From: Choristocarpus tenellus KU-1152
Lineage: Eukaryota; Protista; Phaeophyceae
Length of the DNA stretch: 38,045 nucleotides
Assembly: GCA_964200185.2 (NCBI GenBank)
Contig: CAXNAD020000036.1
Coordinates: 1 to 38,045, forward strand
Reading direction: 5' to 3'
Shown here: positions 10,401-38,045 of the stretch, piece after piece
Layout of the letters: every line of letters starts with the position of its first letter
Position numbering within the stretch: position 1 is the stretch's first letter
The notes under the pieces: generated by a model
Database searches by the model: none
What the model was told of the DNA's origin: nothing
Seen by the model: only the letters and a program-made list of their open reading frames with translations
Program-made: the position numbers and the translations under genes

Positions 10401-13400
10401 TATTGACACCCCTAATGATGGTACATACTCAAATCAACTGACACCAGTCTTGGTCAATGTCAAGGTCGATGGAAGACAAGGGTCTCAAGGTACAGCAGAG
10501 AATGATGGTGCTGTGCAAGGGTTAACATCCAACCTGATGTTCATGTATTACCCTTCCCACGAGGTCAAGAGTGTATGGCCCTCTTCTGGGTCGGCCTTCA
10601 CGCCAGTAACAATCTTTGGTAGAGGCTTTATTGACTCACCTGACCTACTGTGCCGATTCGGGGACAAAGTGGTCGCTCCTGTCAGTGTGACTGGCTTTGA
10701 TACTGTTATTTGCAAGGCCCCGCCTCAGAAAGGAGATCGTGTGTTTGCAGTTGAGGTGACAAACAACAATGCTGACTGGTCATATAACGGATACACATTC
10801 ACCTACCGACCAGTTCTCTCACTGTCTGCAATGAATCCAAGGGTTGGACCTCTGAATGGGAGCACAATAGTCAAAGTGAGTGGTTCAGGATTTATGAATG
10901 ATAGCAGCCTGTCATGTCGCTTTGGGTCAAGGCTAGTGACAGCTGTCCCTGAGTCTACAAACGAAATTCATTGTGTAACACCACCAGCAATGAATTATGG
11001 TGTTGTTGCGGTTGAAGTAGTTGAGAATGGGAACTCCTTTACCTCAAGTGGATGGTCCTTCAACTACCTCCCCGATGTGGAAGTCACTTCAGAAGGACCA
11101 CTTGCTGGACCTGAGTATGGGGGCACCATTGTCACCTTGATAGGGCTGGGATTCCTTGGGCAGACATATATTATTTGCGAATTTGGCTCACATAGATCAC
11201 GTGTTCCTGGTAGATGGCTTGGAGGGACAGCGTTTGAGTGCAAGTCACCCCCCCATAAGCCAGGCCTAGTCATTCTGCGGTTAAGTATCAACGGACAACA
11301 GTTCTTTGATACTCACCTTGTATATGAGTATCGCTCGCGGGCTACGATTAGGACGATTGACCCTGAGCAAGGTCCAGACTATGGTGGCACAGTAATTGAG
11401 GTCACTGGCACAGGCTTTGTCAACGCCTCATCTTTGGTGTGCCGTTTTGGAGACATATTGAGTGAAGTCGAGTTTCTTGATTCAACAAAGGTACACTGTC
11501 ACGTGCCAAGGGCTCCTGAAGGTAGCATGCCAAAGTCAGTCGCTGTTGAATTGTCCAATAATGGTGCGGACTTCACTAGCAGTGGGATCAAGTACAAGTA
11601 TTTCTCTTCACTTCAAGCAATGGACATAGAGCCCAACAGTGGGCCGACTACAGGTCACACCATTGTTGTAATTTCGGGTATGAACTTCTCTGAACTCAGG
11701 AGCGGACGTTGTCTGTTCAATGGTACAGCAGTTGACGCGAGCATAAATGGGTCTAGGGAGCTACTTTGTCTATCTCCACCTATGGCAGAGCCAGGTGCGG
11801 TGAAGGTTGAGATTACAAGTAGGGGACATGTCATAGGATCAGAATTTACGTTTCTATACCATGACCCTATGGAAATATTCAGCATTTTTCCACGCACTGT
11901 GCCAGAGTACGGTGTATCAAGTATCTTAGTCATTGGTTCTGGTTTTGTGAAATCAAAGCATCTGGTGTGCATCTTCAGCCCTTCGGATGGGAAAGATCTC
12001 TCTGGTCCAGCCAAGTTCATTTCCAGGTCTCTCATCAAATGTGACCTACCCAAACTTGCTCTTGGCAACATAGTTGTTGGGGTGTCCAGCAATGGGATGG
12101 ATGTGTCTCTAGCAAAAGAGCACCTGAAGGTTATGGCTGCATCAACTGTGAGCTCTCTGTGGCCTTCCTCTGGATCCACAGCTGGGGGAACCATGGTTCA
12201 AGTCCAAGGTACTGGGTTTGCGGACTCCTCAGAAGTGTACTGCAGATTCGGTGACAAATCTGTAGTACCTCACATGGTATTGAGTTCTACCGTTGTCGTC
12301 TGTCGAGCTCCTCCTCATGGAGAAGGTGGGCAGGTGTCGGTTGAGGTGACAACTAGCAAATTCGACTGGACCTCAAGTGGGGTCATGTTTACCTACAAGC
12401 CCCCAATTGAAGTAACAGATGTATATCCTACTGCTGGACCCCTGAGAGGCGGGACTGTGGTTAGTATCAAGATCCTCGGATTTGACTCAGGGAGTGTAGA
12501 TGAGCTATCATGCCGTTTTGGGACCAACGTTGTATCAATAGCACTAATTGATTCTGAAGGTGCTGCCCTTTGTATATCTCCAGAGATGTCGCAGGCTGTC
12601 ACAGTTCCACTGGAACTTACCAACAATGGAGTCGATTATACAAGAAGCGGGTGGAGATTCACATATGTCCCTCAAATCAATGTGGAAAATGCTAATCCCT
12701 TGTCGGGCTCTGAATATGGCGGTACTGAAGTGGTAATAGTGGGCTCCGGTTTTCCACACCTAAATTCACTTGTGTGCGAATTTGGTTCCCTAGGAAGGCC
12801 AGTACGTGCTCATTGGTTGGATCAAACAAAAATATCATGCATTACTCCTCCTCAGATGCCTGGTACAGCAGCTCTGAGGATTGGTCCGAATAGACAACAA
12901 GTTCTTGATTCTGGCCTAGTTTTTACCTACCAAGCGACACCAACAGTGTTAACTATGGATCCCTCCTTTGGACCTGTGCTTGGTGGGACACATGTCAATG
13001 TCATTGGTGCAGGCTTTGCCAATTCGACTGAAATAGCTTGCCATTTCGGTGATCAAACAGTGGCAGCAATTTTCATCGATAATATGAATATTTGGTGTGT
13101 TGCGCCTGCCACTAGATCAGTTGGAAAGGTCTCCATACAGGTCTCCAACTATGGCAAGCATTTTGTCAGCAACAGTCTGCAGTATCGATATGTACCAGCC
13201 CTGAAGGTCCTACATACTCATCCTTCTAGTGGTCCAACTACTGGTGGTACAACTCTTGCAATCTTGGGTTCAGGGTTTGTAGGTGGAGGAAAACTAAGGT
13301 GTATAATCGGAGGAAACGTGTCAACAGGTGTAGTTCTAAGTGATACTGAGCTCCTCTGCAGTACACCAGAACAAAATTCCATGGGACCTGTTTTGGTTGA

Positions 13401-16400
13401 AGTCACTGCCAACGGTGTTGACAGAGTAGCGAGTCAGACCAAGTTTACATACATTGAGCCTGTTTTAGTAGATGATGTGCACCCTGTAAGTTCAAGTGAA
13501 TTTGGTGGTGACAGAGTAGTGGTCTCTGGGAGGAACTTCCTACCCTCAGATTCTCTTGTATGCAGATTCGGTGCCAGGGATATAGCAAAGGCTTCATGGA
13601 TTTCTACCACAAGTCTTTCATGCCTCGTCCCTCCGTCAACTTCTGGGCCGCGCATTGTTACACTATCAGTTTCCAACAATGCTCAAGACTTTCCTGCAGC
13701 ATATGTGACCTTCACGTACAAACCAGGTTTCACGCTTTATGGAGTGGATCCCTTGGCAGGTCCTCCACAAGGAGGCACTGAAGTAGTAGTGACAGGCACA
13801 GGTCTAGACAAGGATGGTTCTTGGGCGTGCGTGTTTGGAGATTTAGCTGCTGTTATTGCTGAACGGCTTCCAGATGGAAGGCTCAAATGTCTCACACCAT
13901 CACTTCCACCTGGTATTGTTGCGCTTCGAGCATTTCGTTCAACCTCTTCAATGGCATCAGCCATGGCAGGGGCCTTAGCTGCTGCAGCTGACGGTTCTCT
14001 TCAAGATTTCAACCTCACGTTTGAGTACCAAGGGGTTGTTAGTACTACTTCAGTCGAGCCACTGAGCGGATCAATAGATGGTGGCACCCCCATCACCGTA
14101 CGGGGTTCAGGATTTGCCAACACAAGTTCACTATCATGCGGATTTTTGTGTCTGAATGGTGTAATGATAAAAAGCCCAGCTTCTTTTTCATCGACTAACT
14201 CAGCAATATGCATGTCTCCAAGGCTTGATCATGGCGTGGTGTGTGGTCATGGTGGTGGAACATTCTTTGTGTCAGTCATCTTAAGTCTAAACAGTGTTGA
14301 TTATAGTACACATGGGCCTCAGTTTTTATATTTCAAGCCAGTTGTGGTTCTTGGGGTCTCTCCAGAGCTTGGATCAGAGAGAGGAGGGACACTAGTGACT
14401 GTCATAGGCCATAACTTTATCCCCTCAGAAGAACTGAGCTGTCGGTTTGGGGCCCAGCTTCCGGTTCCAGCTGTGTTTGTAAACTCCGAGACTATCCAGT
14501 GTGTGGCTCCTTTTTCAAAGCTTGGACCAGTATCTGTATCCTTGACAGCAAGCAATAACCTTGTGGAATTTTCGTCAACATCTGCGCTTTTCGAGTATCA
14601 TCGTGCAGCCTTGCCAGAGTCGTTCAATCCGTGGGCTGGTCCGATTCTTGGAGGCACGCATGTAACAGTGAAGGGCCGGGACTTCCATCCCTCGAAACGA
14701 TTGGCATGCCGCTTTGGTACGATCAATATCCATGCCACATGGGAGTCACCAACACATATATTGTGCAAATCGCCAGCATCAGCCTTTGCAGGACCTGTCC
14801 GGGTGCAAGTTACTCAAAATGGTGTTGATTGGTTAGACATTGGACTCAATCATAATGAGCCCAATCATATCAAACGGGACTTCTTGTACTACCACCCTCC
14901 GATGGTTGAGAGTCTTCTCCCTCGCACTGGTCCACTGCAAGGTGGCACACATGTATCTATTTTAGGTCGTAATCTGGGCGCCTTCTTTACATATGGACAG
15001 ATATCAGATTCTGTGTTATGCCGCTTTGGCAAGGTTGTTTCCCCTGCAATCAGTGTGGTGAAATCACACACCACCAACCCAGTTGAAATGGAAGAAGTTG
15101 AGCAGAGAAGGGACTCAGTGACCTGCAAGAGTCCCAACTTTGAAGGTCAAACATTACAACAAGTGGCAGTGGCTGTGAGCATAGATGGTGGGGCTTATTT
15201 CTCTTCGCCAGAACTTTGGTTCACCTTCTTACAGGTAAGAAATTTTGAGGAGAAATACGGAAACCTCTTTGGAGCATATACCAGGTGGCAATGTGTGTCG
15301 ATGGAGAGAGAAGTTTCTGCCGCTCAAGTAGATTTTCTCGCGTTATTCGACTTGAATGCAATTGAGGACTCCTTCTCCCTGGAACTCTGGGCAATCATGA
15401 TTTATTAACGACAACGTGTTTGTCCAAGTCATCGTAAAATATTGTGTTTTCACCATGCAACAATGTTTTCCATATGTTGAAGTGGAAACACTTGAGCATG
15501 TACACGATGGATGTTGTCTTGCACCAGTGAAGAATGAGTCATGCATGTAGCCTGAGAGCCTGTCACTTTGAATTTCTTCAACATCCACAGAGTTGATCTT
15601 TGTTGTGGGGTGTTCTTGATCATTGTCTTGCATTCCTATGTCATGGTTCCAATACCTTTTGTACCAACCTGGAGCAGGCTGGTCAATGTGAAAATATTCT
15701 CAGTCCTTTGTTCGAACCAAACAATGTACACTCTCTATCGATTGACAATGGTTGCATGTTTTTAATGCCTTGGCTCTTGCATCAGGTTCCTTTTCTTGAA
15801 TCCCTAAGTCCAGCATCATCGATAGAGCGTGTGGAGACCTCACTTATAATATCAGGTCGTGATTTCCTTGATACTCCAACCCTGGCCTGTCGATTTGGTG
15901 TAGAAGGGGTTGTCTCAGTTGCTCAATATTTGTCAGGTGGGCGTATTTCATGCCTCACATCTAAGAATTCTGCACCAAGTACTGTTGAAGTGGAAGTGAC
16001 AATCAACGGAGTTGATTTCACTGCACAAGGAAAAATCCATACATTCCTCCCAATGGTGACCACTGATGAGGTAGTTCCTTCAGTAGGATCAGTAGATGGG
16101 GGAATGGTGATCAACATTCTTGGCAACGGATTCATAGCATTGGAATCTAGCGCATCAAGACTCTCCTGTAGTTGGGTGATGCCAGGGACTGAGAGTCGTG
16201 ATGTGCTAGTGACAGAAGCGAGACCACTATGGAATGAGGCACTTGAATGTGCAACTCCACCATCAGTATTCACTGGTAAGGCTTCACTCTCACTTGCAGT
16301 GGATGGTGTGACCATCACCAAATCACCAGCTTTGGAGTTTTTGTACGAGCTCACTCCAAGAATATTTGAGCTTTTGCCAGCCCATGGACCACTCAGTGGA

Positions 16401-25400: not shown

Positions 25401-28400
25401 GCATAATGGGGATGTCATATCATCGAGTGACCTCCATGTCGAATATATAGGAGCCTTGAGTATTGTGTCTTCATATCCCCTTGTTGGTCCTGCTGTTGGA
25501 GGCACTAATGTTACAGTGTATGGTGAGGGCTTTCGATCAGAGGAAACATACCTTTGTATGTTTGGAGACATTGCAGTACCTGTTCTGGCCGGAGATATTA
25601 ATTCCTCCAGTATCTCATGTATGTCACCGCCCTCGCACTATTTCCGAATGGGAATGGTACAGCTTCAACTCAAGCACTTAGGAGAAGGTACAGGCGGTCA
25701 AGACGACCGTAGGGATGGGAGCTACATCAATGATACCCAACTTTCTATGACGGTCAGAGGTGCTGCCTTTCACATGGCGCTAACTACACCCCTTTCATTT
25801 CAGTATCACATCAATATGGCTGTATCAAAGTTGTATCCCAGCCATGGGCCCTCATCCGGTGGATCTGCAGTACGAGTAGTAGGAATAGGATTTTTGAATC
25901 TTCCAACAATGGCCTGCCAGTTTGGTGTTGCACAGCCAAGTGTTGCGCAGTACGTCAATTCGCACACGTTGGTGTGTAGAGCTCCATCCCGAGCTGCTGC
26001 ATTGGGTAGAGAGGGGAAGAGAGAGACTTCTGATAGATTTGCTGCTGTCACTGTCACAGCAAATGGACTGGACTTTTCGTCAAGTGAATCAGCTGCTTAT
26101 TTTTCGTATGATGAAGATGTCATACTTCGCTCCCTTACACCTGATCGTGGTGCTGAGGCAATAGAGACAAGGGTGTTGATCCAAGGTAGTGGGTTTCGAG
26201 ATTCCTCACATTTGGCCTGTCGATTTGGACTCTATGTTATTCCTGCAGTTTTCATCAACGTGAGCATCATAGAATGCACAGCTCCCCCTAAGGGTCGCCT
26301 CAGAACAATGTCAGTTGATGTTACACTGAACGGACAGGACTTTGCTTCGGATGAGAATGGGAGTCTTGTTTTTTCTTATTCTGACCAAATTTCAGTGCTC
26401 GCCTTGAATCCACGATTGGGCTCAGTCCGAGGAGGTACCAATGTTCAAGTGTTGGGGATGAATTTTGAAAATCATACTGAACTCTTCTGCCTCTTTGGAG
26501 TGATCCAAGTTCCCGCAAACTTCCTTAGCTCAGAAGTTATTACATGCAATTCTCCACCTTCACTGACTGGCCCAGAGACAGTTGCAGTTGAGGTCTCCTA
26601 TCGACAATCCATGGATCCACAAGCAGGTCGAGGAAAAAGATATTTCAGACACCGTTCTCTGGCTTGGAGCAGCAGTGGAGTCAAGTTTGACTTTGCCATT
26701 GAACCTGCTGTGTTGAGCATGAGGCCTACTTCTGGACCAACATATGGTGGCACAAATGTTGTTATATATGGGAACAACTTTGTTGACTTGCCTGATCTTG
26801 GGTGTCGCTTTGGTTCCCTCTACACTCAACCATCAGATGTAATTTTCTTGTCCTCTACAGAACTTGTCTGTATAGCTCCAATGTGGACACTCCACGAAGG
26901 CAGAGAGACAGTAGCAGTGGCTGTTTCTGTCAATGGACAAGATTTTGGCAAACAGACCGGACAGTTTTCATATTATCTTCACCCACAGGTATGCTTTCGC
27001 CTCTCACAGGTAATTCGAGTAATTCCTCGGGAATGATGTGTGGCAATAGAATAACATAGGTGAACAAGGAAGCGAAACAAAGTGGTGTCAAATAGAGCCA
27101 AAACCTATGATGGATTATATTGTTGGAGATCACCCCCCCAAAAACTATGTTCTAGATGAGCAGCATGATGTCAATACCCACACTGCAATATGAATTTCAC
27201 TTGGTTGACATGTTTCTATATTTTCAGGTCCTCTCAGTTTATCCTGAGCGTGGCCTGATTACAGGGGGGACCGTGGTAACAGTTCAAGTTGACAACCTCA
27301 CATCTGCACTTTCTACTTACGAGGAGGGAGAACTGATGTGTCGATTTGGATCAGGTCCATATGAGGAATGGGGGGTTGTCCCTGCTGAAGCTCTACCTGG
27401 TCAAAATGCTCTTAACTGTGTTGCACCAGCTCCACCAGATGGCTTTGGACTTCTTGAGGTCAGATGTGTGGTTAAGTTGGACCCAGTAGCAAGCTTCATC
27501 ATTAGCAGCTCACCATTTGACATCCTATCTTACTATTCTAACGTCTGTATATGTATATGTGCTACAGGTACAGCAATTATCTATCACTGCATCATCTCAA
27601 GGAGCTGAAGTTCAGGTAGTTGAGGTGACTGCCCTTCCTGAGGCAGATGAAGTTCAAGAGATTTCCATTCGGGGCTGGGGATGGCAAAAGCAGGTCCAGG
27701 CGCTGAAGGTACAGGCCGTACTTGCAGAAAATGAAACTGCTGTGCAGGTGAGGTATAAAATCTACAAAAATAGTTTGAACAATTCCCAGGAAAACACCAC
27801 AGCTGGCATTCTATTGCCTCTGCCAAGTGTACAATGTTGACTGATGATAAACTTCGGTGGCGTGTACTCTTGAGTGTATCAAGCCAGATAATTATTTTTT
27901 CTGAATATCTGAGACTCTAATCAACTGGGCATGGGATGGTGCACATGTCTTGATCCCAACATACAAGATGTTTGTAGCCTTCTAGATTTTCCTTCTTTGT
28001 AGCCAGGTCAACTTTTCATTCTTGGCAACAGCAGCACTTATTCTGTCCAGAAGTGAGTTTGAGGAAAACATGAGGGACTTGGAGTGCTGTGAATGTCATA
28101 GTGGGAGGAGTGAGAGATATCGATAGAGATATCGATAGCGATGAAGCGTAAAGCTCAATTTACCGTGCTAGAGGAAATATCATTTGTAGCTGAAAGAAGA
28201 ACATGCTCACATGCACATCGTTAGGATGCATGAAGTGTGGCAGCCACATGCAGCATGCTCCTGCAGGTTTGCTGGCCTCCTGTCAAACCGACTTTGATCT
28301 ACCACCCAAAATACTGAATCTCAATAGATATCCCCTTCTTGGACAACAGGTCGTGCACACCTCATTGGAACACTCTCGGGAGGTGCAGCGAATTACTGTA

Positions 28401-31400
28401 GATGCTTCTGCAAATATCAGTGAGGTACTACTCTCATAGCACATGTTGCTTTCACAAACTAATCAAACTTCACAATAGTTCAGAGTCTTTGTAGTACTTT
28501 GCAAATTGTGGAGTGTTAGGTAGCACATAGTGAACTACAGTGATTTTTGGGAAATCTTTTGACAAGGAAGAGGGATCCAGACGCCTCAACCAACCTGCTA
28601 TCTGAGTCAAAGTATCTTAGACGGTAGAGTCGTGTCCTTTTGGGGGTCAACATCCGATGTTGCGATTGTGATGTAATTTTGCTATCGTATTTGATAGGAA
28701 GTATCAATATCCTTGTTCTGGACACACCTTTTCATAACGTATACATTTTACCTACTTTGAAACATTTTGGAGTAGAAAATGCCATAAAAAAACCCATGGT
28801 AAGCCAAGCCCCAAACGGACAAACAGGGCAAAACTTGTACCCTAACCCTAAGATACTTTCACTCATCTACAGTTTGTTTATCCATGATCTCAATATTTCA
28901 GGTTCAGCAGCTGATTGTGGCTTCTGAAGATATTTCTACACTTTCTGGAACCTTCATGCTCCGGCATGGCTTTCATTTTTCTGAACCTGTTCCATTTAAT
29001 GCTACTGCAAAGGAGGTGAGTTGCAGTCCTTGCAATAGCAAAAAGTGAGTGCCAAGATAAGAAAGAAATAATGTACAGAGACACAGCCTTGTTTTATGAC
29101 ATTTTGAAACCTGGAACACACAATTTGCAGCAATTGAACTCTCTGTCTTCTCCATTTCCCATGTGCTGTCCTCCATTCCTGTGTGTGATATATCTCAGAT
29201 CGAGGGAGCATTGGGTGGCATTCCAAGTCTAGGGGGTGCGATAGTCCAACGAAGAGATATTTTTGATTCTGTTCTTGGAATAGAGGGAACAGTCTATAAC
29301 ATTACAATGGCCTACGTGATTGGTGATGTTGCTTCATTGGTGGTGGTAACAAGCTCTCTTAGGGGTCTTGGTCTAAACACTTCAGTGGTAGAGGTAAGGA
29401 TACTGTGACTGTGGTTGAAATGTTCATTGCAGTCACAATGAAGAATACCTTCCCAACATGTACCCTTAGGTGCTTGTCCAATCAACAGATTTTCAAATTT
29501 TGATTGGTTCTCCACTCAATAATAGATTATTCCTCTTGCAGGGACTCTATCGTCTCTCACTCAAGTATCACTGTGCCGGAAACAGATTATGGTGTCTTTG
29601 CCATACCCAGCTCTTCTTGCCTTTGCTATTTGAGCAGATCAGTAGTTGTGCCTACCTGGGACTCCTTAGCAGCCTAGCAACATGTTTGAACAAATCTACA
29701 TATGTCATATTGGTGTAGATCATACTGAATTCTGCAGCTTGATTTTATTATTAAACCTAAAACTTCTTTCAGAAACGAACCTGAAGTCAAGCAGGGTATC
29801 TGTATTTGTTTAGTCCCTTCACGGAAAAAATCTTTCTCTTTGCATGTCTTGCAGCTGGTGAAAGGGGTACCCTGTGAAGTTCAGGATGTAGCAGTACATG
29901 GAGCAAAAGGGGGAGAACTCTTTCTCAGCTTCCGTGGGGAAGTTACATGGCCAATACCATGGAATGCACGATCAGCTGATGTGGAGGCTGCACTAGAAGT
30001 GAGAGGATTAAACCAACATAGATTAATATATACCCTGATCAAGCATCGAGGAAGCTGGAGAGCATTGACCTTCCATTCTAGCATGATGTGGGACTATATC
30101 AAGCTTGTCAATTTAAGAATACTGTTGTTTTTCCCCTGAGGATACTCCTGCTCTAATATAGATTGGATTAATTAATGAATGATTGACTTCTGTCCAAGGA
30201 CTATATTTATTGTGAGCATTATGTTGACCTCCTGTCTACATTGTTGAGCAGCACTCAATACAAGCAAGTACTGGAAGCAAATACTGCTCTTCTTCTCTAC
30301 CCCAAAACCTCTCTTGTGGTCGGCACAGGCCCTTGACACAATGGGTGATGTCATGGTCAACCTGACATCGCCAAATTCATATGATGGTCGGACTTGGTCC
30401 GTTGCCTTCATAGGGATTGGTGGAGACATGCCCCTTCTCATGGCAGACTCCTCAGGTTTAACAACTGAGTTTGCTAAGAGATCATCGGAAAATCCTCCAG
30501 ACTCTGCTGTAGTAACGGTAACAGAAGTGCACAAGGGGGCAGCAGAACTTGCTACAGGGGATGTCAATCTCTATTTCGACAGTGATGGAGATGGCATGTA
30601 TGAGAGCCTAGTTGTAGAGGTTATGGCGGAGGCTGATGCTCTGCAAATAGCCCTAAGAAATCTCAGTGGCTTCCTTGAGGGAGCATTGGTTTCAGTGGAG
30701 AATGGAGGAGCAAGAACTAGGAGTGGAGGTGAGAACTGCAGTCTGTGTGTAATAATTGTGCATTAGCTCATATACATCGGAAATAACTATATATGACCAA
30801 AAAAGAAGTTGCAAAGCATACTAAATCAAACATGGCATTGCAGACTGGAAATCCTTGTCTTTAGTTTTTCATGGCATCACCATACACTCTTCCATTTGCA
30901 GGCACTGCTTGGCTTGTCACATTCACGGAAGGCAGGGATCATGAGTCGTTTTACGTGGGGACAGAGGGAATGGGCGGAACATCACCTTTTGCACTCATAG
31001 AGGAGGTAAGACTGCAACCAGCTCAACAAATAAATGGAAGTAGCTGGTCGTCATTCTAGAGTTGGACCTTTTCAGGTGATGAGCTATCAGCTTCACCATA
31101 CTGTTGCAACAGCAACAGCACAAATAATAAGAGAGCATCTCCATGCATGACAGGTGATCAAGGGAACACAGTTTGAGGTGCAGAATGTGACAACAGTGGG
31201 ATCCTCAATGAGTGCAAAACTTGATTCCTTCTTCTTGGGCTTTGATGGAGGTGCGGCACATGAGTTAGCTCTTAGGGGATTCATAATTCAGGTGGCTTTC
31301 TTCCTTAGACTCAATAGAAGAGGCTTGGCTTATGACTGCTAGTGTTTTTGCCTCCCTTGTATATATATGTGCATAATATGTTTGTAGAGAGTTTAATTTG

Positions 31401-34400
31401 GTCATTTTTGAGTGCATGTGATGGTACAGAAATCCTAGGTTCTAGAGTTCCTTTTGTAGCTTTTTCACAGTCAAAAATCAGAAACCGCTGCCAGAATTTC
31501 ATGCCTAGGTCATGACCTCTAAGTCCTGGTCTGGCAAACTGAGATATGCATAAAAAATAATATAGTATGTCCAAAACAACCACAACCCTAACACTAACTT
31601 CTGTCCAACTGTGAATGCCTCGGGGGCTTGGAATGATTGCTAGTTACAACGGATTACTTAGCGGCAAATGCCAGTGCATCAGACATCCGTGCTGCACTGG
31701 AAGCCATTGATTCTGTTGGTGAAGTGAATGTTACAAGAGAGGACCTTGGTGGTCTCCTTTTCACTTGGCTCGTGACATTTTTTAAGCCATCAAGGACTGG
31801 TGACGACATTCCTCTGCTGTATGCTGGGGGGCAGGATCTAACAGGGTCCGGCCTTTCAACCTTGAGTGGTGGAATCAATGTCACACGTGTACAGAAGGGA
31901 ACCCTGAGATCAATATGTGGAGAGGTAAAGTAATAACATAATGCAAATCTCAGTGTCTGGGGAGAATAATTTTTCCCACTGGTGACCTTATGATCACGAA
32001 TCTCAATTGAATGAATAAAGGATTAGTAGTAACACTATTTTTAACTGTTTCCCTACCTTTATGTCATAGGTTGAGGTCAAAAACAAATTGCGGAACTGAC
32101 TATCTGGTAGAATATCTGAGTATGCTTATGTGCCTCTTTTGGGTGGTATGGTTAAGGCTTCTTATAAGACTTGAAATGACTCCTGCTAGATACCAAGTAC
32201 AGTATTCTGGTTCCCCTACTTCTGCACAGTTAAAGATTTCTTTGGGTGGAGGAGAAAACACTTCAGTGACAGTGTATCACAATGCTTCTGAAACAGAGAT
32301 GGAGAAGGCAGTGGAATCTCTACAAGGAGCAGGAGATGTAAAAGTCTCTAGGTCCTCAAATGGAGCAAATGGTCTTGAATCATTCAGGTAGGAAAATATC
32401 AACTTATTGAATAGGCAAGGCGATTCACAGCAACCATATATTTGTATTTTGTATTTGGGTGTTTCTTCTCTGTTTGTATTTCGATCCCATGCGATGACAT
32501 TGGATACTTTCTATTTCCAATAAACTCATCTATTTGTACCTAACTGGATCATGTGCTACATTAGCTAAATTATTATTAATTTCAGAACCGCAACATGCGG
32601 ATTTTCCCTCTTTGGCTGTCTCAGATGGACAGTAACTTTCCTCACCCGAGCTGGAGAGGTCCCGCCCTTATCAGCAAATGACAGTTACTTGACAGCACTA
32701 ACTCTCACTGGGGTAGCTTCAGCTGGTACAACAATATTGCAAGACGGAGCAGGAGTGTGCTGTATTGGTGGCAGTATCACTCTCAGCTTCAATGGCACAG
32801 AACTTGAGGAAATTGACCTTGACAATGGGGAGCTAGATTCAGCCTACTTGCTTCAGCGACTTGATGTTATTACGGAAGGTACGACTATCTCATGTAACTG
32901 AAAATCTGTAGCAAGGGCATTAGAATCAATTGATCATTCTCCTGGTGTACATTATGTAGTTGAGGATTGGACATGGATACTCTGGAGAACAATAATTTGA
33001 AGTTCGTAGGTTCTATGAATGCATGGGAGCCCAAATGAATGTTTGATATGCACATGTCTGATATATCCCTCCACTCTCTTCACAGGAGATGCTTGGGGTC
33101 CAGTAACTGTCAGTTACCATGCATTGATCAACAATGGCTCAACTTGGCTAATCACTTTCGAAGAGTATTCCAATGGTGATGCCCCGCTGCTTGTGGTTAG
33201 CGAAGATAGGGTTTCAAATGGAAAGGCATGGGTTGAGCAGCTGACAAGTGCAGAGCGGCCTGAGGTTCATCGGGTGCTAGTTGCAGCGGATTCAACGCTG
33301 GGATCTAGCAGCATGATAAGGTTGTCCTTGGGCAGCAAGGTTACCCGAGCTGTCAGCATTGATGCTTCGGCCAGTATTGTTCAAAATGTGAGCCTGTGTA
33401 ATGTGCTGTCCATTCTTTCATCCTAAGTGTGCAAGACTTAATACTCGAATTAGTTCATGAGGGTGGTTCGTTTTATAGATGGACCGTGTCCCACAAGAAG
33501 TTCTCAGCTTGTATGAAACTTGAATATGAGTAACTGGTATTCTGATCAGTGCAAGTGCACAAGTACAATAAGTTCATGTTGCGAGCAACTGGATGATATG
33601 CAACGTGTGACTCTCTCTGCCCTCCTATCCAACAAGTGGAGTTGCTAGAAAAATTATAGTGTAATCACTGTGTGGTCAGACTATGACTGAAGTAGACTAC
33701 ACCAATTTGTAGGAAGATGATTTTGATATTCTCTAAGATTGTAGATACTTTCACTTACAGTTTCCCAAAGCGATATTGTAACTGAGTCAAAATAGAGGGT
33801 AGAGCCATGTCCATTTGGGGGCCAAAGTTCCATGTTGTGATTTTGATGTAATTTTGGCTATCGAGTTTGTTAGGAAGTGTTAGTATCCTTGTTCCGGACA
33901 CACCTTTTCACAACATATACATTATACCTACTCCAAAATGTTTTGGAGTAGGTATAATGTCATAAAAAGTCTGAGGGAAGCCAAGCCCCAAACGGACAAA
34001 CAGGGCAAAACTTGTACCCTCTCTTAATAAGAGACTTTCACTCAACTGCTGCTCAATATCTAATCACAATCAAGAAAGGATAAGAAATTGAAACTACTAA
34101 CATCACACATCAATCTTTGTTGATGGTATGAATGCATCCCCAGGCATGTACTAGTGCTCGCTACATCATATCCCTCAGTACAATAATTATGCACAATCTG
34201 ATATGAAGCTTGAGCGATGAACTGCGCACTCTGTACTCTCTATATTGCACATGCGAATATTGTGCATGAATGGGACATAATAGCTCATGTCAACAAAAGG
34301 CTTTTAATAGCACCAAAAAGTCACTGTACATGGAGCGTTGATAAGTTCCTGGAAAGTTACTCTAAAAAAAAGACCTTGAATTACAGCTGTGTTGCTTCTA

Positions 34401-37400
34401 TGCTTCCTTGCTGTGAGTCAGGTAATGCACCAAGATCTTGCCTCTCTTGGAGTGCGGCCTTCCATCAGATCAGTGTCTGCATCAGAACTTCGCATGTCTG
34501 GTGACTACCGTGCATGGGACGTCACATGGACAACGGTCCCTGGCGGTCTTGGCACTGCTGACTTTAGTTGTACAGGAGTTAACTTGACAGCTATGTATAC
34601 AAGTGATGCAAGATGCTTTGTCTCCCATAGGCAATCTGCTACTAGTTCACCCCTATCGGGGGTATTTTCATTATCAACCACTGCTGGTGATACCCCTGAT
34701 CTTGCACACAATGCATCTGCCAATGAAGTGTCTGCGGCGCTTGGAACTCTTTCCATCGTCACCAATGTCTCTCTCATCAATACCCTTCCTGATGGGAAAG
34801 GTGGAGGAACTTACCGCATCACATTCTCGGGAACAGATAAAGAAATCAATCTCCTAGGTGTGATATCAACCTATCTTAATGGAACTGGTGCTACTGCAAG
34901 TACTCATGGTGCCACTCCAGGGTGCAGATGGGGGGGGGATTTTGCTATCTCTTTTGGTGACCTCGAGACAGAAGCTCTCTCTTACAATGCGTCACCAGAC
35001 GAAGTTCTTCATGAAATCCAGAACCTAGGCATTACTGACGAGATTACTGTTGAAAGACAGAGTTTGGACACAGGGTATAGGTGGATGGTAACCTTCCTGG
35101 GAGATCCTGGAGGACCCGTTGATTTGATGAAGGTGAGAAGTCAGTAAGGCGCACGTGTATCTCAACGTCTTACAGATGTGTTACTGCAAGTTGTTAGATC
35201 TCACACAATGTGTGCAACAACATGTATATATATATATAGAGAGAGAGACTCATAACACAAATAAAAAATCACCTTGAATTGATAAAAAAAATAGTCCAAA
35301 ACATAGCTTGCTCACATTTGGATTAATATTTTTTTTCAGAATATTCTATATTGGCAAAACTGTTGATCACAAAAGCTTGTTGCTTGTGCTAATACAGCTT
35401 TTGGATTGAGGCAAACCATTGACTATATCCCAGGAATCCACCCAGGGCGCTCAAACTATCCCCAAAGGCATCCAATATTTTTTCCATGCCTAAAGCGAGT
35501 TTATATCTTGATATTGGTCAGATTTTGTTTTCATGATGGAGAAATGGATGTATCCTAACCTTGAAATTTCACACTTGGAAAATGTGAAACTTTGTGGTGA
35601 TATCTTTTGTTGCTTCTCCACATACACTACACAAGTTTTGGATTAAACATGCTACTCCCCTTTTGAGTTGTCCTGCAATGCGTGCATGTACCCATATTTA
35701 TACACATATCAAAATTTCTAGCACAGTTAGAGTATTTTTATTGTCATGAAGTCATCATAATAATGATATCGGTGTAGTTCTGTTGGCAAGATCAAAAGAG
35801 ATTCACATTGCTTCTAAGGATATTTGCATTCATTCTGTGCACAGGAATCAGATCATGCACGCCCACCAAGAATGCCATTTTTGCAAAAATTCTGAGGGCC
35901 TACATGCAGTACCTTTTTGTATTGTATTGTATTGATTACTTGAATACTAGGCACTCCACACAAATTTTCTGTTGACATTTTCTCTGTTTTTTATATATTT
36001 TCATATTTTGCAACAGAATTCAATTGAGTTAAGTTTGGACGCATATGTCTATACTTCTATATTTGGATATTCCTCCTCACCCAGTTAGTTGCATCATCGA
36101 CAAAGCAGTTGTTCCCGCTGACACACAATGGTCAGGTGGCTTGGGAGGATTTACAAGGCACAGGAAGTCACGCATATGTCTATCATCAGTCCAGCGGACA
36201 TGAGCCTCTGGGTGGAACGTTTTCCCTCTTATATGGTGGCAGTATCACTGTCCCAATTGCGTGGAATGCCACAGCAACTGAAGTAGAAGTTGCTCTTGAA
36301 AATCTCCCTGCTGTGGGTGACGTGCATGTCTCCATTGCTGCACCGGGCTCAAGTTGGGCAATTGAGTTTACAACACTTGGTGCACCGTCAAATCTTGGAA
36401 ACCTTCCACTCCTTGAAGTGGACAGGACTTTCCTTCAGGGGAGTTCAGTGACTGTACAGATTGAGGAATTATCTGCAGGCTGTTGTGCTGTTGAAGTCAC
36501 AGCAAATGGGGGCACAGATTTTTCCGACGATGGGGTATCTTTTGCGTACTTTGAACGTCCTGTTGCTACTGCTGTAATTCCTAGGGCTGGCCCTACTTCT
36601 GGAGGAACCCAGATTGTGGTAATAGGACTAGGGTTTCATCCCCATTCAAAGGCAGAGAATGCTGAACAAGGTGGACTCTCATGCATATTTGGAGGCTTAA
36701 TAGAGACTCAAGCCACACTTATCAACTCAACAGCAGCCAAGTGTGTCACCCCACCAACAGATCGGAGGGGCACCATTACAGTTGCAATGAAGTGGGATGG
36801 TTCAGTTGATTCTTCCTTCAGTATTGCCACCTTCTTATACTTCGATAGCACTTCGATTCAATACATGAAACCCAGTCGATTTTCCAACTATGGTGGCATT
36901 GAGTCCACAGTATATACCTATCAAGGATCGTTCATGGGTGCTGAGGTATCATGCATAGTTGAAGTCAGGATACCCTCCAATCTTACCAAGGTGGGATATG
37001 TGTCCAAGGAGTACACATATGTGGCAACACTACTAGAAACAAATACAACAGAGGCATATCTGTGCCCCATACCAGGGATTGGAGATTTCTTTGACTCTGC
37101 CTCCTCGTGGATTGATGGTGACTGGAGAGCTGCTGGATTCATTAACCTGTCTGGAAATGATGGCCAAGACAAGACAAACCACCTCATCTTCCAATACAAG
37201 CCGCCTGTTCATGTAGATTATGTTGAACCTTCAACTGGGGAATATAGTGGCGGAGTATTAGTCGAAGTTACAGGGTCTGGTTTCCTAGAAGGGGATGAAC
37301 ACAACAGCCTACTTTGCCACTTTGGACATGGGGGTGAGGTCCCTGGTCGTTTTCTGAGCCCAACTAAGATGGAATGTCAAGCACCACCACACGACAACGT

Positions 37401-37935
37401 GCAATCAGTACAAACAATTACAGTTGATGGAGCTTCTGCTTTCCATGAGATACAAAATATATTGCTCCGGACACCCATTTCCAAGTCGGGCAACATCAAC
37501 AACATCAGTTTCCCATTGCGAGGAACATGGAGTCTGGAGGTTGAAGGGTGGACAACATCAGGTCTTGCACCAAATGCAAGCACCCAAGATATGTCAAAAG
37601 CCCTATATCTACTTCCCAATGTGGGCAATGTGAATGTTACTAAGGAATATGATACTTTAGAGGAATCTTCACTCGGTGACCTTTGGAATATCACAGGTTG
37701 GACAGTCACCTTCATTGATCGTGGTGGTGATGTACCAGCAATGACTGGAGATACTTCAAATCTGTTTGGTGGCTCTCCTTCCGGCAACCCTGATGTAGTG
37801 ATTCGCACAACACAGGATGGGCATGAGGGTGATGATGTTTTGCAAGTTGTGTATATGTTGCAAACGAACAGGTCCAGCTTGATGCCAGAGACACAGGTTG
37901 TGACATTGGCAGTTGGAGCAAAGCCATTGCCTGAG
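1309..37935 (+). CDS. Giant multi-exon extracellular IPT/TIG-repeat protein (fibrocystin-L-like modules), partial, at least 7,581 aa in 27 exons
   Basis: 27 exons bounded by AG/GT with matching phases at all 26 internal introns (21 phase 0, 4 phase 1, 1 phase 2). Domain motifs continue across junctions. About 59 repeats of the IPT/TIG pattern P..GP..GGT.V.V.G.GF...C.FG...C..P...V.VS.NG.DF...F.Y. No stop is reached, and the last exon ends at a GTGAGT donor. Confidence 0.9.
1964..2143 (+). CDS. Exon 2: LamG-like domain
   Basis: tttcag|GGA ... AAG|gtgagc, phase 0-0. Confidence 0.75.
2939..3166 (+). CDS. Exon 3: LamG-like core
   Basis: ctgcag|GTC ... GAG|gtggga; encodes QWSHILVGWNETHAFVHAN and YYTGLIDNLE, matching the W.H...W and F.G.ID motifs. 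Confidence 0.85.
3702..3961 (+). mobile_element. MITE copy 1 (about 260 bp, intron 3)
   Basis: TIRs GAGCCAAAGTATCTTAGAGAGTA / TACCCTCTAAGATACTTTCACTC; colinear with the copies at 28604 and 33784; possible CTCT TSD if one base was lost. Confidence 0.85.
4081..4794 (+). CDS. Exon 4: end of LamG region plus cadherin-like/Big domain
   Basis: caaag|GTG ... AGG|gtgagg; GLVSLWRFHEGRG; LTYIPNPG...ISYTV...ATVLLSVQAVIDLP. Confidence 0.85.
5160..5624 (+). CDS. Exon 5: second cadherin-like domain and start of IPT 1
   Basis: aacag|GAT ... GAG|gtgagc; VNDVDA...TNRALHDL; ends PMAAPVTGGLNLE. Confidence 0.88.
5891..7994 (+). CDS. Exon 6: IPT/TIG domains 1-7
   Basis: aacag|GTT ... ACCG|gtgaga (phase 1). Confidence 0.92.
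8001..8060. repeat. Imperfect 30-bp tandem duplication at the start of intron 6
   Basis: GAAATTGCTTTTGGGTACTGAAATGGTTGA / GAAATTGTTGTTGGATCCTGAACTGGTTGG. Confidence 0.6.
9293..15234 (+). CDS. Exon 7 (5,942 nt): IPT/TIG domains about 8-28
   Basis: aatag|GT (phase 1) ... CAG|gtaaga; 2037-aa ORF made of IPT repeats. Confidence 0.95.
15786..16706 (+). CDS. Exon 8: IPT/TIG domains about 29-31
   Basis: atcag|GTT ... GAG|gtgaga. Confidence 0.92.
17784..17801. repeat. (TC)9 microsatellite
   Basis: Read directly; about 50 nt upstream of the exon 9 acceptor. Confidence 0.9.
17852..19306 (+). CDS. Exon 9: IPT/TIG domains about 32-37
   Basis: ctcag|GTT ... GAG|gtgagt. Confidence 0.92.
20266..21087 (+). 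CDS. Exon 10: IPT/TIG domains about 37-39
   Basis: atcag|GTG ... CTG|gtaagt. Confidence 0.92.
21302..23773 (+). CDS. Exon 11: IPT/TIG domains about 40-48
   Basis: cccag|ATG ... GAG|gtaagc. Confidence 0.92.
24733..26988 (+). CDS. Exon 12: IPT/TIG domains about 48-55
   Basis: caaag|GTG ... CAG|gtatgc; CHFGHLE|VMARLL joins one domain across the intron. Confidence 0.9.
27228..27458 (+). CDS. Exon 13: N-terminal part of split IPT domain 56
   Basis: tttcag|GTC ... GAG|gtcaga; PERGLITGGT...CRFG...CVAP. Confidence 0.88.
27568..27747 (+). CDS. Exon 14: tandem EVQ strand repeats
   Basis: tacag|GTA ... CAG|gtgagg. Confidence 0.85.
28113..28136. repeat. 12-bp tandem duplication AGAGATATCGAT x2
   Basis: Read directly, intron 14. 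Confidence 0.7.
28350..28424 (+). CDS. Exon 15: EVQ strand repeat
   Basis: aacag|GTC ... GAG|gtacta; VVHTSLEHSREVQRITVDASANISE. Confidence 0.8.
28604..28864 (+). mobile_element. MITE copy 2 (intron 15)
   Basis: GAGTCAAAGTATCTTAG ... CTAAGATACTTTCACTC, flanked on both sides by ATCT (4-bp TSD). Confidence 0.9.
28902..29015 (+). CDS. Exon 16: module A start (absent from the ORF track)
   Basis: ttcag|GTT ... GAG|gtgagt; VQQLIVASEDISTLSGTFMLRHGFHFSEPVPFNATAKE. Confidence 0.85.
29199..29393 (+). CDS. Exon 17: module A
   Basis: ctcag|ATC ... GAG|gtaagg. Confidence 0.85.
29855..29998 (+). CDS. Exon 18: module B start
   Basis: tgcag|CTG ... GAA|gtgaga; EVQDV...IPWNARSADVEAALE. Confidence 0.87.
30329..30728 (+). 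CDS. Exon 19: modules B and C
   Basis: cacag|GCC ... GGAG|gtgaga (phase 1). Confidence 0.87.
30902..31005 (+). CDS. Exon 20: module C end
   Basis: tgcag|GC (phase 1) ... GAG|gtaaga; TAWLVTF. Confidence 0.85.
31154..31250 (+). CDS. Exon 21: module D start
   Basis: gacag|GTG ... GGAG|gtgcgg (phase 1); EVQNV. Confidence 0.8.
31644..31924 (+). CDS. Exon 22: module D
   Basis: gctag|TT (phase 1) ... GAG|gtaaag; ANASASDIRAALE...WLVTF. Confidence 0.85.
32230..32387 (+). CDS. Exon 23: module E
   Basis: cacag|TTA ... TTCAG|gtagga (phase 2). Confidence 0.83.
32625..32878 (+). CDS. Exon 24: modules E and F
   Basis: ctcag|A TGG (phase 2, restores RWTVTF) ... GAAG|gtacga (phase 1). Confidence 0.85.
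33086..33387 (+). CDS. Exon 25: modules F and G
   Basis: cacag|GA (phase 1) ... AAT|gtgagc. Confidence 0.85.
33784..34043 (+). mobile_element. MITE copy 3 (intron 25)
   Basis: GAGTCAAA ... ACTTTCACTC, flanked on both sides by AACT (4-bp TSD); internal 20-bp perfect inverted repeat at 33919-33960. Confidence 0.9.
34422..35132 (+). CDS. Exon 26: modules G, H and I
   Basis: gtcag|GTA ... AAG|gtgaga. Confidence 0.87.
35225..35248. repeat. (TA)7(GA)5 compound microsatellite
   Basis: Read directly, intron 26. Confidence 0.9.
36136..37935 (+). CDS. Exon 27: module J, completion of IPT 56, IPT 57-59, start of second module block
   Basis: gtcag|GTG ... GAG|gtgagt; the gene continues past the window. 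Confidence 0.9.
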
Positions 37936-38045
37936 GTGAGTATTCTATTATTCACTTTGGTATACTGAGTATTTCATATGTTAGATCTTGCATATTGCAA
38001 TGGCCCAAAGTATCTGGGAGGAGGGGGGGGGGGTCTACACCAGGG

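What the first reader, a model, noticed from the sequence alone, without database searches (positions are those of the whole stretch)
27456..36480. Six unassigned EVQ strands match six strand-less modules: nested out-and-back topology
Seen: the insert opens with 7 EVQ-type strands spaced about 14 aa apart (EVQQLSI, EVQVVEV, EVQEISI, QVQALKV, AVQVVHT, EVQRITV, EVQQLIV). Ten modules A-J follow, with consensus G.F.L....T..I..NA.A..V..AL..L...G.V.V...W.VTF....G..P.L. Modules A, B, D and G are directly preceded by their own strand (EVQQL, EVQDV, EVQNV, EVHRV). C, E, F, H, I and J are not, giving 6 free strands and 6 incomplete modules. Inference: the outgoing chain lays down strands and the returning chain completes each domain in reverse order (strand 6 with C through strand 1 with J). 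This is intramolecular donor-strand complementation forming a two-chain arm, with B, D and G as secondary twigs. I know of no description of this design for such proteins; it is the best candidate here for an undescribed system.
Basis: inference. Interest (0 to 1): 0.9.

Follow-up and report, generated by a model that had tools for sequence, protein, structure and literature searches.

The report
Nested strand-and-module arm inside an IPT domain
A giant brown-alga-type surface protein carries side arms built like Russian dolls: small domains are inserted one inside another, so the outgoing chain leaves one strand per domain and the returning chain supplies the rest. The principle is known from flagellar proteins, but not for this unnamed, widespread domain family.

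Summary
At 27568-36474 a block of about 1,115 aa is inserted inside one IPT/TIG domain. It opens with 7 Q-strands (VQxIxI type, about 14 aa apart) and holds 10 modules. A, B, D and G have their own strand; C, E, F, H, I and J do not, giving 6 free strands and 6 strand-less modules.

The nested reading is supported by indirect evidence.
- The gene's other two IPT-hosted inserts are also balanced, at 3/3 and 8/8.
- So are inserts in an oomycete and in Phaeothamnion.
- Among the module-bearing members of one bacterial multicopper-oxidase family read by eye at a single site, strand number equals module number: 1/1, 3/3, 8/8, or tandem pairs.
- AlphaFold2 of a 3+3 bacterial arm gives pLDDT 90.6. 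Structural alignment shows three domains made of strand 3 + module 1, strand 2 + module 2 and strand 1 + module 3.
- AlphaFold2 of the Phaeothamnion orthologue pairs strand 6 with module C and leaves A, B and D contiguous.

The module has no Pfam or NCBIfam model. Its closest solved relative is the mycobacteriophage Bxb1 C-terminal extension (CTE) domain.

The design is recursive domain insertion, as in FliD, flagellin and the RNA polymerase Si3 insert. It is a new variant of a known kind.

The window's own spliced insert was not folded. The scan also noted a similar "matryoshka" FN3 protein elsewhere in this genome.

The parts
27228..27458 (+). N-terminal part of the host IPT/TIG domain. It ends after the C-x-x-P strand, just before the insert.
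   Evidence: TIG HMM hit 27225-27461 covers profile positions 3-72 of 93. Donor gt at 27459.
27568..27747 (+). Exon with free strands 1-4 and the first two residues (VQ) of strand 5
   Evidence: Translation and ag/gt boundaries. Motif hits at 27568, 27610, 27652 and 27694.
28350..28424 (+). Exon with the rest of strand 5 and free strand 6
   Evidence: Orthologous to the first strands of P0021.
28902..29015 (+). Strand 7 (module A's own strand) and the N-half of module A
29199..29393 (+). C-half of module A
29855..29998 (+). Module B: own strand (29879) and N-half
30329..30728 (+). C-half of B, then the N part of strand-less module C
30902..31005 (+). C part of module C
   Evidence: Phase-1 acceptor.
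31154..31250 (+). Module D: own strand (31178) and N part
31644..31924 (+). C part of module D
32230..32387 (+). N part of strand-less module E (an alternative acceptor lies at 32203)
   Evidence: Orthologues have no strand here.
32625..32878 (+). C part of E, then the N part of strand-less module F
33086..33387 (+). C part of F, then G's own strand (33265, VH variant) and the N part of G
34422..35132 (+). C part of G, then strand-less modules H (34647-34922) and I (34923-35132)
   Evidence: Module HMM E-values 2.8e-32 and 3e-28. 62% identity to Discosporangium P0001.
36136..36474 (+). Linker and strand-less module J, the last module of the insert
   Evidence: Module HMM E-value 7.4e-34..
36475..36561 (+). 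C-terminal part of the same host IPT domain (its last two strands), which closes the loop
   Evidence: The sequence continues as the normal end of an IPT domain.
37204..37407 (+). N part of a second split IPT domain, three IPT domains downstream
   Evidence: TIG HMM hit 37210-37428 covers profile positions 3-73.
37408..37965 (+). Start of insert 2: a free strand, module K with its own strand, and two more free strands. It continues on contig C386, minus strand.

Best explanation
The block is a side arm built by recursive domain insertion.

The repeating unit is an alpha/beta module of about 100 aa with no Pfam model, related to the Bxb1 phage CTE domain. Its first strand is the Q-strand (VQxIxI), followed by a body of strand, helix and four strands. 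The first strand and the body are joined by a short loop, and that loop accepts further modules.

In the window, the chain leaves the host IPT domain at a hairpin and lays down strands 1-6, one per future domain and about 14 aa each. At the tip it builds complete modules A and B. On the way back it supplies the bodies C, E, F, H, I and J, which pair with strands 6, 5, 4, 3, 2 and 1. Complete modules D and G hang off as twigs. The chain then re-enters the IPT domain and finishes it. Neighbouring domains of the arm are therefore joined by two chain segments.

Shown:
- the counts and the exon map
- the insertion inside the IPT domain
- the counting rule in homologues
- nested pairing in AlphaFold2 models of a bacterial arm and of the orthologue's inner part.

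Inferred:
- the pairs strand 1-J to strand 5-E in this protein
- the rigidity of the arm
- an extracellular spacing, adhesive or mechanical role, which is my lowest-confidence step.
For: Insertion inside an IPT domain:
- The N part is 27228-27458 (profile positions 3-72) and the C part is 36475-36561.
- Inserts 2 and 3 sit at the same position of their host domains.

Counting rule:
- This gene has 6/6, 3/3 and 8/8 free strands to strand-less modules.
- P0021 insert 2 has 3/3 and Pythium P0017 has 3/3.
- The bacterial multicopper-oxidase family at one site has 1+1 (many), 3+3 (P0164, P0169, P0173, P0175, P0176), 8+8 (P0058), or tandem strand-module pairs (P0165, P0177, P0194).
- The automated parse found 11 closed segments of type 3/3, and none of type 3/1, 3/2 or 3/4.

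AlphaFold2, bacterial arm (P0164:695-1005):
- pLDDT 90.6 and pTM 0.77; the free strands score pLDDT 85-96.
- Solved single domains of about 90 aa align to model ranges 34-134, about 21-217 and 5-302, with 69-92 residues aligned. The best is Z 11.5 at rmsd 2.2 A.

AlphaFold2, orthologue (P0021:1-586):
- pLDDT 84.9.
- Ranges are 25-137 (A), 135-261 (B, Z 14.8), about 11-15 to 355-358 (strand 6 + C) and 358-474 (D).

Foldseek also returns FliD D1-D3 and flagellin D2/D3, which are classic out-and-back proteins.
Against: - No structure was predicted for the window's own spliced insert. Exons were not joined, and no stored full-length product was found.
- The strand 5-E pair did not appear in the structural read-out.
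Pairings are read from the first and last aligned residue of each alignment, not from contacts.
- The alignments given to AlphaFold2 were built from paralogous arrays chosen by me.
- The three-chain test on the window's exons gave no answer.
- The automated whole-protein bracket matching was no better than shuffles.
- No RNA data confirm the splicing.
Confidence: 0.8

Rival explanations
1. The leading Q-strands form a separate small beta-sheet or solenoid (a stalk or spacer). The strand-less modules fold on their own, and the equal counts come from the duplication history.
For: The strands are regular and amphipathic with a 13-14 aa period, which a meander sheet could also show. The three-chain test gave no binding signal (not evidence either way).
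Against: The counts are equal in every insert read by eye, across bacteria, oomycetes and ochrophytes. Tandem duplication alone would not keep two separate arrays equal. In both AlphaFold2 models each free strand that could be read belongs to a discontinuous module.
Confidence: 0.07
2. Strand-less modules take the tail strand of the preceding module as their first strand, and the free strands are flexible linkers that only set the length of the arm.
For: The tail (VxVxE type) sits at about the same distance before the next module as a Q-strand does, and it sometimes scores as a strand.
Against: In model 1 the tail of module 1 (strand 125-132) lies within that module's own aligned range, 34-134. 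Modules 2 and 3 take residues from 21-30 and 5-17. The free strands have pLDDT 85-96, which is not linker-like.
Confidence: 0.06
3. Strands and modules do pair one to one, but in parallel order (first free strand with first strand-less module) rather than nested.
For: The counting rule alone does not fix the order.
Against: The last strand always sits at the normal distance from the first module. The model ranges are nested: 34-134 lies inside about 21-217, which lies inside 5-302. In the orthologue, C starts its range at 11-15 (strand 6), not at 2-10 (strand 5). Parallel order would require long crossing connections.
Confidence: 0.04

Closest known systems
C-terminal extension (CTE) domain of mycobacteriophage Bxb1 capsid and tail-tube proteins, and the three CTE-like domains of gp23 (PDB 9d9x, 9d9w, 9d93, 9d94)
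   Same: Sequence: the module profile hits gp23 at E = 5e-25 and the capsid protein at 7.7e-4.

Fold: Z 10-14.8, rmsd 1.6-2.6 A, 83-103 residues aligned, 23-30% identity to models of homologous modules.

In gp23 three N-halves (280-466) precede the C-halves (514-595). This suggests nesting there too, which I infer from HMM coordinates only.
   Different: The phage domains are single terminal appendages, or three copies in one tail protein. Here there are 10-13 copies per arm, hosted inside IPT domains of a eukaryotic giant protein. The split point is after the first strand, whereas in gp23 it seems to be after the helix.
Flagellar axial proteins FliD (D1-D2-D3) and flagellin (D2/D3)
   Same: They share the out-and-back chain path, with outer domains inserted in inner ones. 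Foldseek and VIA-align hits have Z 4-6.
   Different: They have only two or three levels and non-homologous domains. The structural similarity is weak and no sequence similarity was detected.
Si3 insert of cyanobacterial RNA polymerase beta' (recursively inserted HABAS/SBHM domains; PMC11515920)
   Same: Homologous domains are inserted into one another repeatedly and form an interdigitated arm, as stated in that paper.
   Different: It has a different fold, host and cellular place. There is no regular 13-14 aa strand array and no strand-count rule has been described for it.
Fibrocystin / PKHD1L1 and other IPT/TIG-rich surface proteins
   Same: They also have long runs of IPT/TIG domains. This window has 58 TIG hits.
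   Different: No G8, PbH1 or PA14 domain was found in the window's exons. The suggested 'EVQ region' of fibrocystin-L was not tested.
Chaperone-usher pilus donor-strand complementation
   Same: A domain lacking one strand is completed by a strand from elsewhere.
   Different: In pili the strand comes from another subunit, and it is the last strand of an Ig-like fold. Here the first strand of an alpha/beta module comes from the same chain.

Membership tests
IPT/TIG domain (PF01833) as host | Match to the Pfam TIG profile above the gathering score | tested here: met
   Neighbouring exons score E = 7e-19 to 7.7e-192. The split host domain matches my TIG HMM at profile positions 3-72 (27225-27461), and the remainder follows at 36475-36561.
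Bxb1 CTE / CTE-like domain | Significant sequence similarity to the solved phage domains | tested here: met
   A profile of five window modules against PDB sequences hits gp23 at E = 5.2e-25 with 3 stretches, the capsid protein at 7.7e-4 and the tail tube at 1.2e-3. PHROGs major tail and tail sheath families hit at 2.6e-6 to 1.9e-39.
Bxb1 CTE / CTE-like domain | Same fold | tested here: met
   Z 10.1-14.8, rmsd 1.6-2.6 A. This was measured on AlphaFold2 models of homologues (P0164, P0021), not of the window's own modules.
Bxb1 CTE / CTE-like domain | Terminal appendage of a phage structural protein | tested here: not met
   Here the modules are internal, nested and in a cellular eukaryotic gene with introns.
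Recursive (nested) domain insertion, as in FliD, flagellin and RNA polymerase Si3 | Domains formed from an early and a late chain segment, with other domains in between | tested here: met
   VIA-align model ranges are 5-302 and about 21-217 in model 1, and about 11-15 to 355-358 in model 2, each with only 69-92 aligned residues.
Recursive (nested) domain insertion, as in FliD, flagellin and RNA polymerase Si3 | The two ends of the insert lie next to each other | tested here: met
   The insert lies within a hairpin of one IPT domain. The same holds for inserts 2 and 3 and for the bacterial oxidase site.
Recursive (nested) domain insertion, as in FliD, flagellin and RNA polymerase Si3 | Nested pairing in this very protein | not testable with these tools
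   The spliced product could not be folded, because exons were not joined and no stored full-length protein was found. Support is the 6/6 count and the orthologue model.
Chaperone-usher donor-strand complementation | Ig-like pilin lacking its last strand, completed by a neighbouring subunit | tested here: not met
   The fold is alpha/beta, and its nearest matches are CTE, sheath-insertion, RRM- and ACT-like domains. The missing element is the first strand, and it comes from the same chain.
Fibrocystin / PKHD1L1 | G8, PbH1/TMEM2-like and PA14 domains after the IPT run | tested here: not met
   Only TIG-type families were found on the window's large exons. The rest of the gene lies on other contigs and was not scanned for these domains.

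The most novel reading that the evidence does not exclude
This unnamed module family may be a general system for growing rigid rods of adjustable length out of a loop of any host domain (IPT, FN3, multicopper oxidase). Each step would add, in a pair, one 13-14 aa strand to the outgoing array and one body to the returning array. Selection would keep the two arrays equal. Nests reach 8 levels in this gene and perhaps 14 in P0012, which would be deeper than I know of for any protein. Such arms would have to fold from the tip inwards. They could act as mechanically stapled spacers or adhesins in stramenopile cell coverings.
Probability: 0.45. Interest if true: 0.8.

Novelty: new variant of a known kind. 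Interest (0 to 1): 0.66.

Why it matters
Three points make it matter.

- The module family is large. A profile of five window modules finds 7,178 cluster representatives at E <= 0.001, from diatoms, oomycetes, brown algae and their kin, several bacterial phyla and phages. It has no Pfam or NCBIfam model.
- Ordinary domain annotation would read these arms as tandem repeats plus a "linker". The counting rule and the models indicate that the linker is half of the structure.
- If confirmed, this would be an extreme and regular case of recursive domain insertion. It offers a simple sequence rule (strands equal modules) for predicting discontinuous domains, a test bed for inside-out folding, and a candidate scaffold for rods of set length.

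For brown-alga biology it describes the side branches of a protein with more than 55 IPT domains, probably part of the cell covering. Its function remains unknown.

Tried and rejected
**Complex prediction.** Complex prediction was run on the window's own exons, with strands 1-3 as partner against H+I and J. It gave no answer (ipSAE 0.02; ESMFold2, my alignments not used). I do not count this for or against.

**Discarded alignments.** In A2 and A4, MAFFT piled all single-module rows onto one module. I replaced them with collinear multi-module rows (A3, A6).

That row was left out and not sent to any other tool.

**Automated statistics.**
- Whole-protein bracket matching against shuffles did not discriminate (779 matched against 786 +/- 12).
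- The equality test over all simple segments gave p = 0.16.
- Segmentation by gaps and missed degenerate strands made both noisy, so I relied on inserts read by eye.

**ESM Atlas.** Fold search and feature search returned only unnamed stramenopile clusters, phage tail proteins and FliD.

**RNA evidence.** No RNA run holds the stretch.

**Fibrocystin-L.** Neither paper read mentions such a region, and no sequence test was possible.

**Spliced insert.** Folding the whole spliced insert would have needed joined exons, so it was left out. The exon pieces were pooled only for a residue-shuffle control. Nothing joined was searched or folded.

**Stored full-length product.** None was found. P0012, the top profile hit, is a different protein.
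Full report
**What the window is**

The window is a whole contig (G000:C36) of a eukaryote with many introns. Its largest exons encode only IPT/TIG domains (Pfam TIG, E = 7e-19 to 7.7e-192). My TIG HMM finds 58 hits on the + strand.

The closest stored protein is a partial product from the brown alga Discosporangium mesarthrocarpum (P0001, 57% identity). A more distant orthologue comes from Phaeothamnion confervicola (P0021). I take the genome to be a brown alga or a close relative.

**Checking the observation**

Stop-to-stop translation, splice-site reading and comparison with orthologues give fourteen exon pieces between 27568 and 36474, about 1,115 aa in all.

- The first two exons and the start of the third carry seven Q-strands, 13-16 aa apart. 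Strand 5 is split by an intron after its VQ.
- A, B, D and G are directly preceded by their own strand. C, E, F, H, I and J are not.
- The strand motif occurs 11 times in 1,114 aa of the insert. It occurs 1.06 times per 1,000 aa in the stalk exons, and 1.2 +/- 1.05 times in residue shuffles.

**The block lies inside one IPT domain**

The exon 27228-27458 matches only profile positions 3-72 of the TIG model. The missing last two strands follow module J at 36475-36561. The two ends of the insert must therefore meet in space.

Three IPT domains downstream a second domain is split at the same position (37204-37407), and insert 2 begins there. The gene continues on contig C386, minus strand. That contig holds the rest of insert 2, three more IPT domains, and a third split IPT with a 13-module insert.

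**The counting rule**

If every module needs one Q-strand, free strands should equal strand-less modules within each closed insert. The table lists the inserts I read by eye.

| Insert | Free strands / strand-less modules |
|---|---|
| Window insert 1 | 6 / 6 |
| Insert 2 (window + C386) | 3 / 3 |
| Insert 3 (C386) | 8 / 8 (nine leading strands, one without Q; five modules with own strands) |
| Phaeothamnion P0021, insert 2 | 3 / 3 |
| Pythium insidiosum P0017 | 3 / 3 |

The cleanest test is a bacterial family of giant multicopper oxidases that carry the array at one fixed site.

- Many members have one strand and one module.
- Five members (P0164, P0169, P0173, P0175, P0176) have three leading strands and three modules about 85 aa apart.
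- P0058 has eight strands and eight modules.
- Others have tandem strand-plus-module units (P0165, P0177, P0194).
- I found no exception among the members I read through by eye. P0191 was read only upstream of its first module.

An automated parse of 258 proteins was noisy. Among simple closed segments it found eleven of type 3/3 and none of type 3/1, 3/2 or 3/4.

**Structure prediction**

No stored full-length product of this gene was found, and exons were not joined, so the window's own spliced insert was not folded. I folded two stored homologues with alignments of collinear arrays.

*Model 1: the complete bacterial arm, P0164:695-1005 (three strands, three modules).*
- Mean pLDDT is 90.6 and pTM is 0.77. 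The three leading strands score pLDDT 85-96.
- Coordinates are not returned, so I used VIA-align ranges as a read-out.
- Solved single domains of about 90 residues align to model residues 34-134 (strand 3 + module 1; Z 11.5, rmsd 2.2 A).
- They also align to about 21-217 with only 69-92 residues aligned (strand 2 + module 2).
- They align to 5-302 with 87 residues aligned (strand 1 + module 3; Z 10.1).
- These ranges are nested.

*Model 2: P0021:1-586, the orthologue of the inner part of the window's insert 1 (strands 5-7, modules A-E).*
- Mean pLDDT is 84.9 and pTM is 0.60.
- The ranges are 25-137 (A), 135-261 (B, Z 14.8), 358-474 (D), and about 11-15 to 355-358 with 69-89 residues aligned (strand 6 + C).
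- The pair strand 5-E did not appear in the lists and remains untested.

**What the module is**

Pfam and NCBIfam have no model for it. A profile of five window modules finds 7,178 cluster representatives at E <= 0.001. Sources where known include diatom-type metagenome and transcriptome proteins, an oomycete, Planctomycetes, Chloroflexi and Actinomycetes.

Among solved structures the profile hits mycobacteriophage Bxb1 gp23 (E = 5e-25), its capsid protein and its tail tube. The models superpose on the C-terminal domains of those proteins at Z 10-14.8. A later preprint calls these domains CTE and CTE-like (PMC13252515).

More distant fold neighbours are phage sheath insertion domains, FliD D2/D3, flagellin D2/D3, and RRM-, ACT- and SEA-like alpha/beta domains.

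In gp23 the profile matches three N-halves in a row and then the C-halves. That suggests nesting at another loop, but this is my inference from coordinates only.

**How it most likely works**

The module consists of a first strand plus a body, and the loop between them tolerates inserted modules. Repeated insertion gives a chain that runs out as a string of first strands and comes back as a string of bodies. Each domain of the arm is then held by both passes. Complete modules placed between levels form twigs (A and B at the tip, D and G on the side).

The arm begins and ends at one hairpin of an IPT domain, so the stalk is not interrupted. Rigidity (pTM 0.77 for three domains) and a spacing, adhesive or mechanical role outside the cell are inferences. 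No function was tested.

**Comparison with what is known**

The principle is not new. Flagellin and FliD follow an out-and-back path. The Si3 insert of cyanobacterial RNA polymerase consists of homologous domains inserted recursively into each other (PMC11515920).

It is not pilus-type donor-strand complementation. The fold, the missing strand and the intramolecular nature all differ.

What appears undescribed:
- this module family as such
- the split after its first strand
- the regular 13-14 aa strand array
- the strict equality of strands and modules
- the depth of nesting, 8 levels here
- the IPT and oxidase hosts.

I found no paper on it in the library searched. That library is incomplete.

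**Limits and omissions**

- The joined spliced model was not built, searched or folded.
- The complex test on the window's exons gave no answer.
- No RNA run holds the stretch.
- The scan's own notes record a similar "matryoshka" protein with FN3 hosts on another piece of this genome (s1-513756). I did not examine it.

**Verdict**

The nested reading is well supported by comparative counts and by models of homologues. It is not yet shown for the window's own protein. It is a new variant of a known kind.

Noticed in passing
window:28618-28843 and window:33793-34020: Two introns of the insert hold direct copies (83-89% identical) of a dispersed element of about 230 bp.
   Followed up: partly
window:37990-38045: The last 45 bases or so of the contig match dozens of other contigs of the genome. 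The contig therefore ends in a dispersed repeat. The gene continues on G000:C386, minus strand.
   Followed up: yes
L006/L005 (G000:C386, reverse strand, about 5,400-14,100 from the contig's high end): This is the third IPT-hosted insert of the same gene. It has nine leading strands and 13 modules, with 8 free strands and 8 strand-less modules. Its large last exon alone holds part of one module and five more.
   Followed up: partly
window:9295-15408: A single exon of 2,037 codons encodes about 20 consecutive IPT/TIG domains. The window has 58 TIG hits in all, and no module occurs upstream of 27,000.
   Followed up: partly
window:27458/27568 and 28424/28902: Phase-0 introns fall exactly between the E that ends one unit and the VQ that starts the next strand. 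Another intron splits strand 5 right after VQ (27747/28350). Exon limits therefore partly follow the strand units.
   Followed up: no
PDB 9d93 chain M (Bxb1 gp23), residues 280-595: The module profile matches three N-halves in tandem (280-330, 342-389, 401-466) and then C-halves (514-559, 564-595). This suggests nested CTE-like domains split at a different loop. The innermost domain aligns as 388-524.
   Followed up: partly
P0058, P0164 and relatives (bacterial multicopper oxidases): The arm is an optional insert at one site of a giant multicopper oxidase. Relatives carry 0, 1, 3, 4, 5 or 8 modules.
   Followed up: partly
P0012 residues 235-3841: The top profile hit (7,591 aa, 46 module stretches, metagenomic) starts an array with about 14 consecutive free strands in the automated parse. 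If that count is real, it would be a far deeper nest.
   Followed up: no
module helix start in all window modules: The near-invariant N-A-S/T at the start of the helix is an N-glycosylation sequon in a eukaryotic secreted protein. It is equally conserved in bacterial and phage copies, so it is probably structural first.
   Followed up: no
L004 (G000:C193:14420-14788, minus strand): An open frame of 1,261 aa elsewhere in the genome shows weak similarity (32%) to the insert-2 modules. It may be a paralogous module-bearing gene.
   Followed up: no
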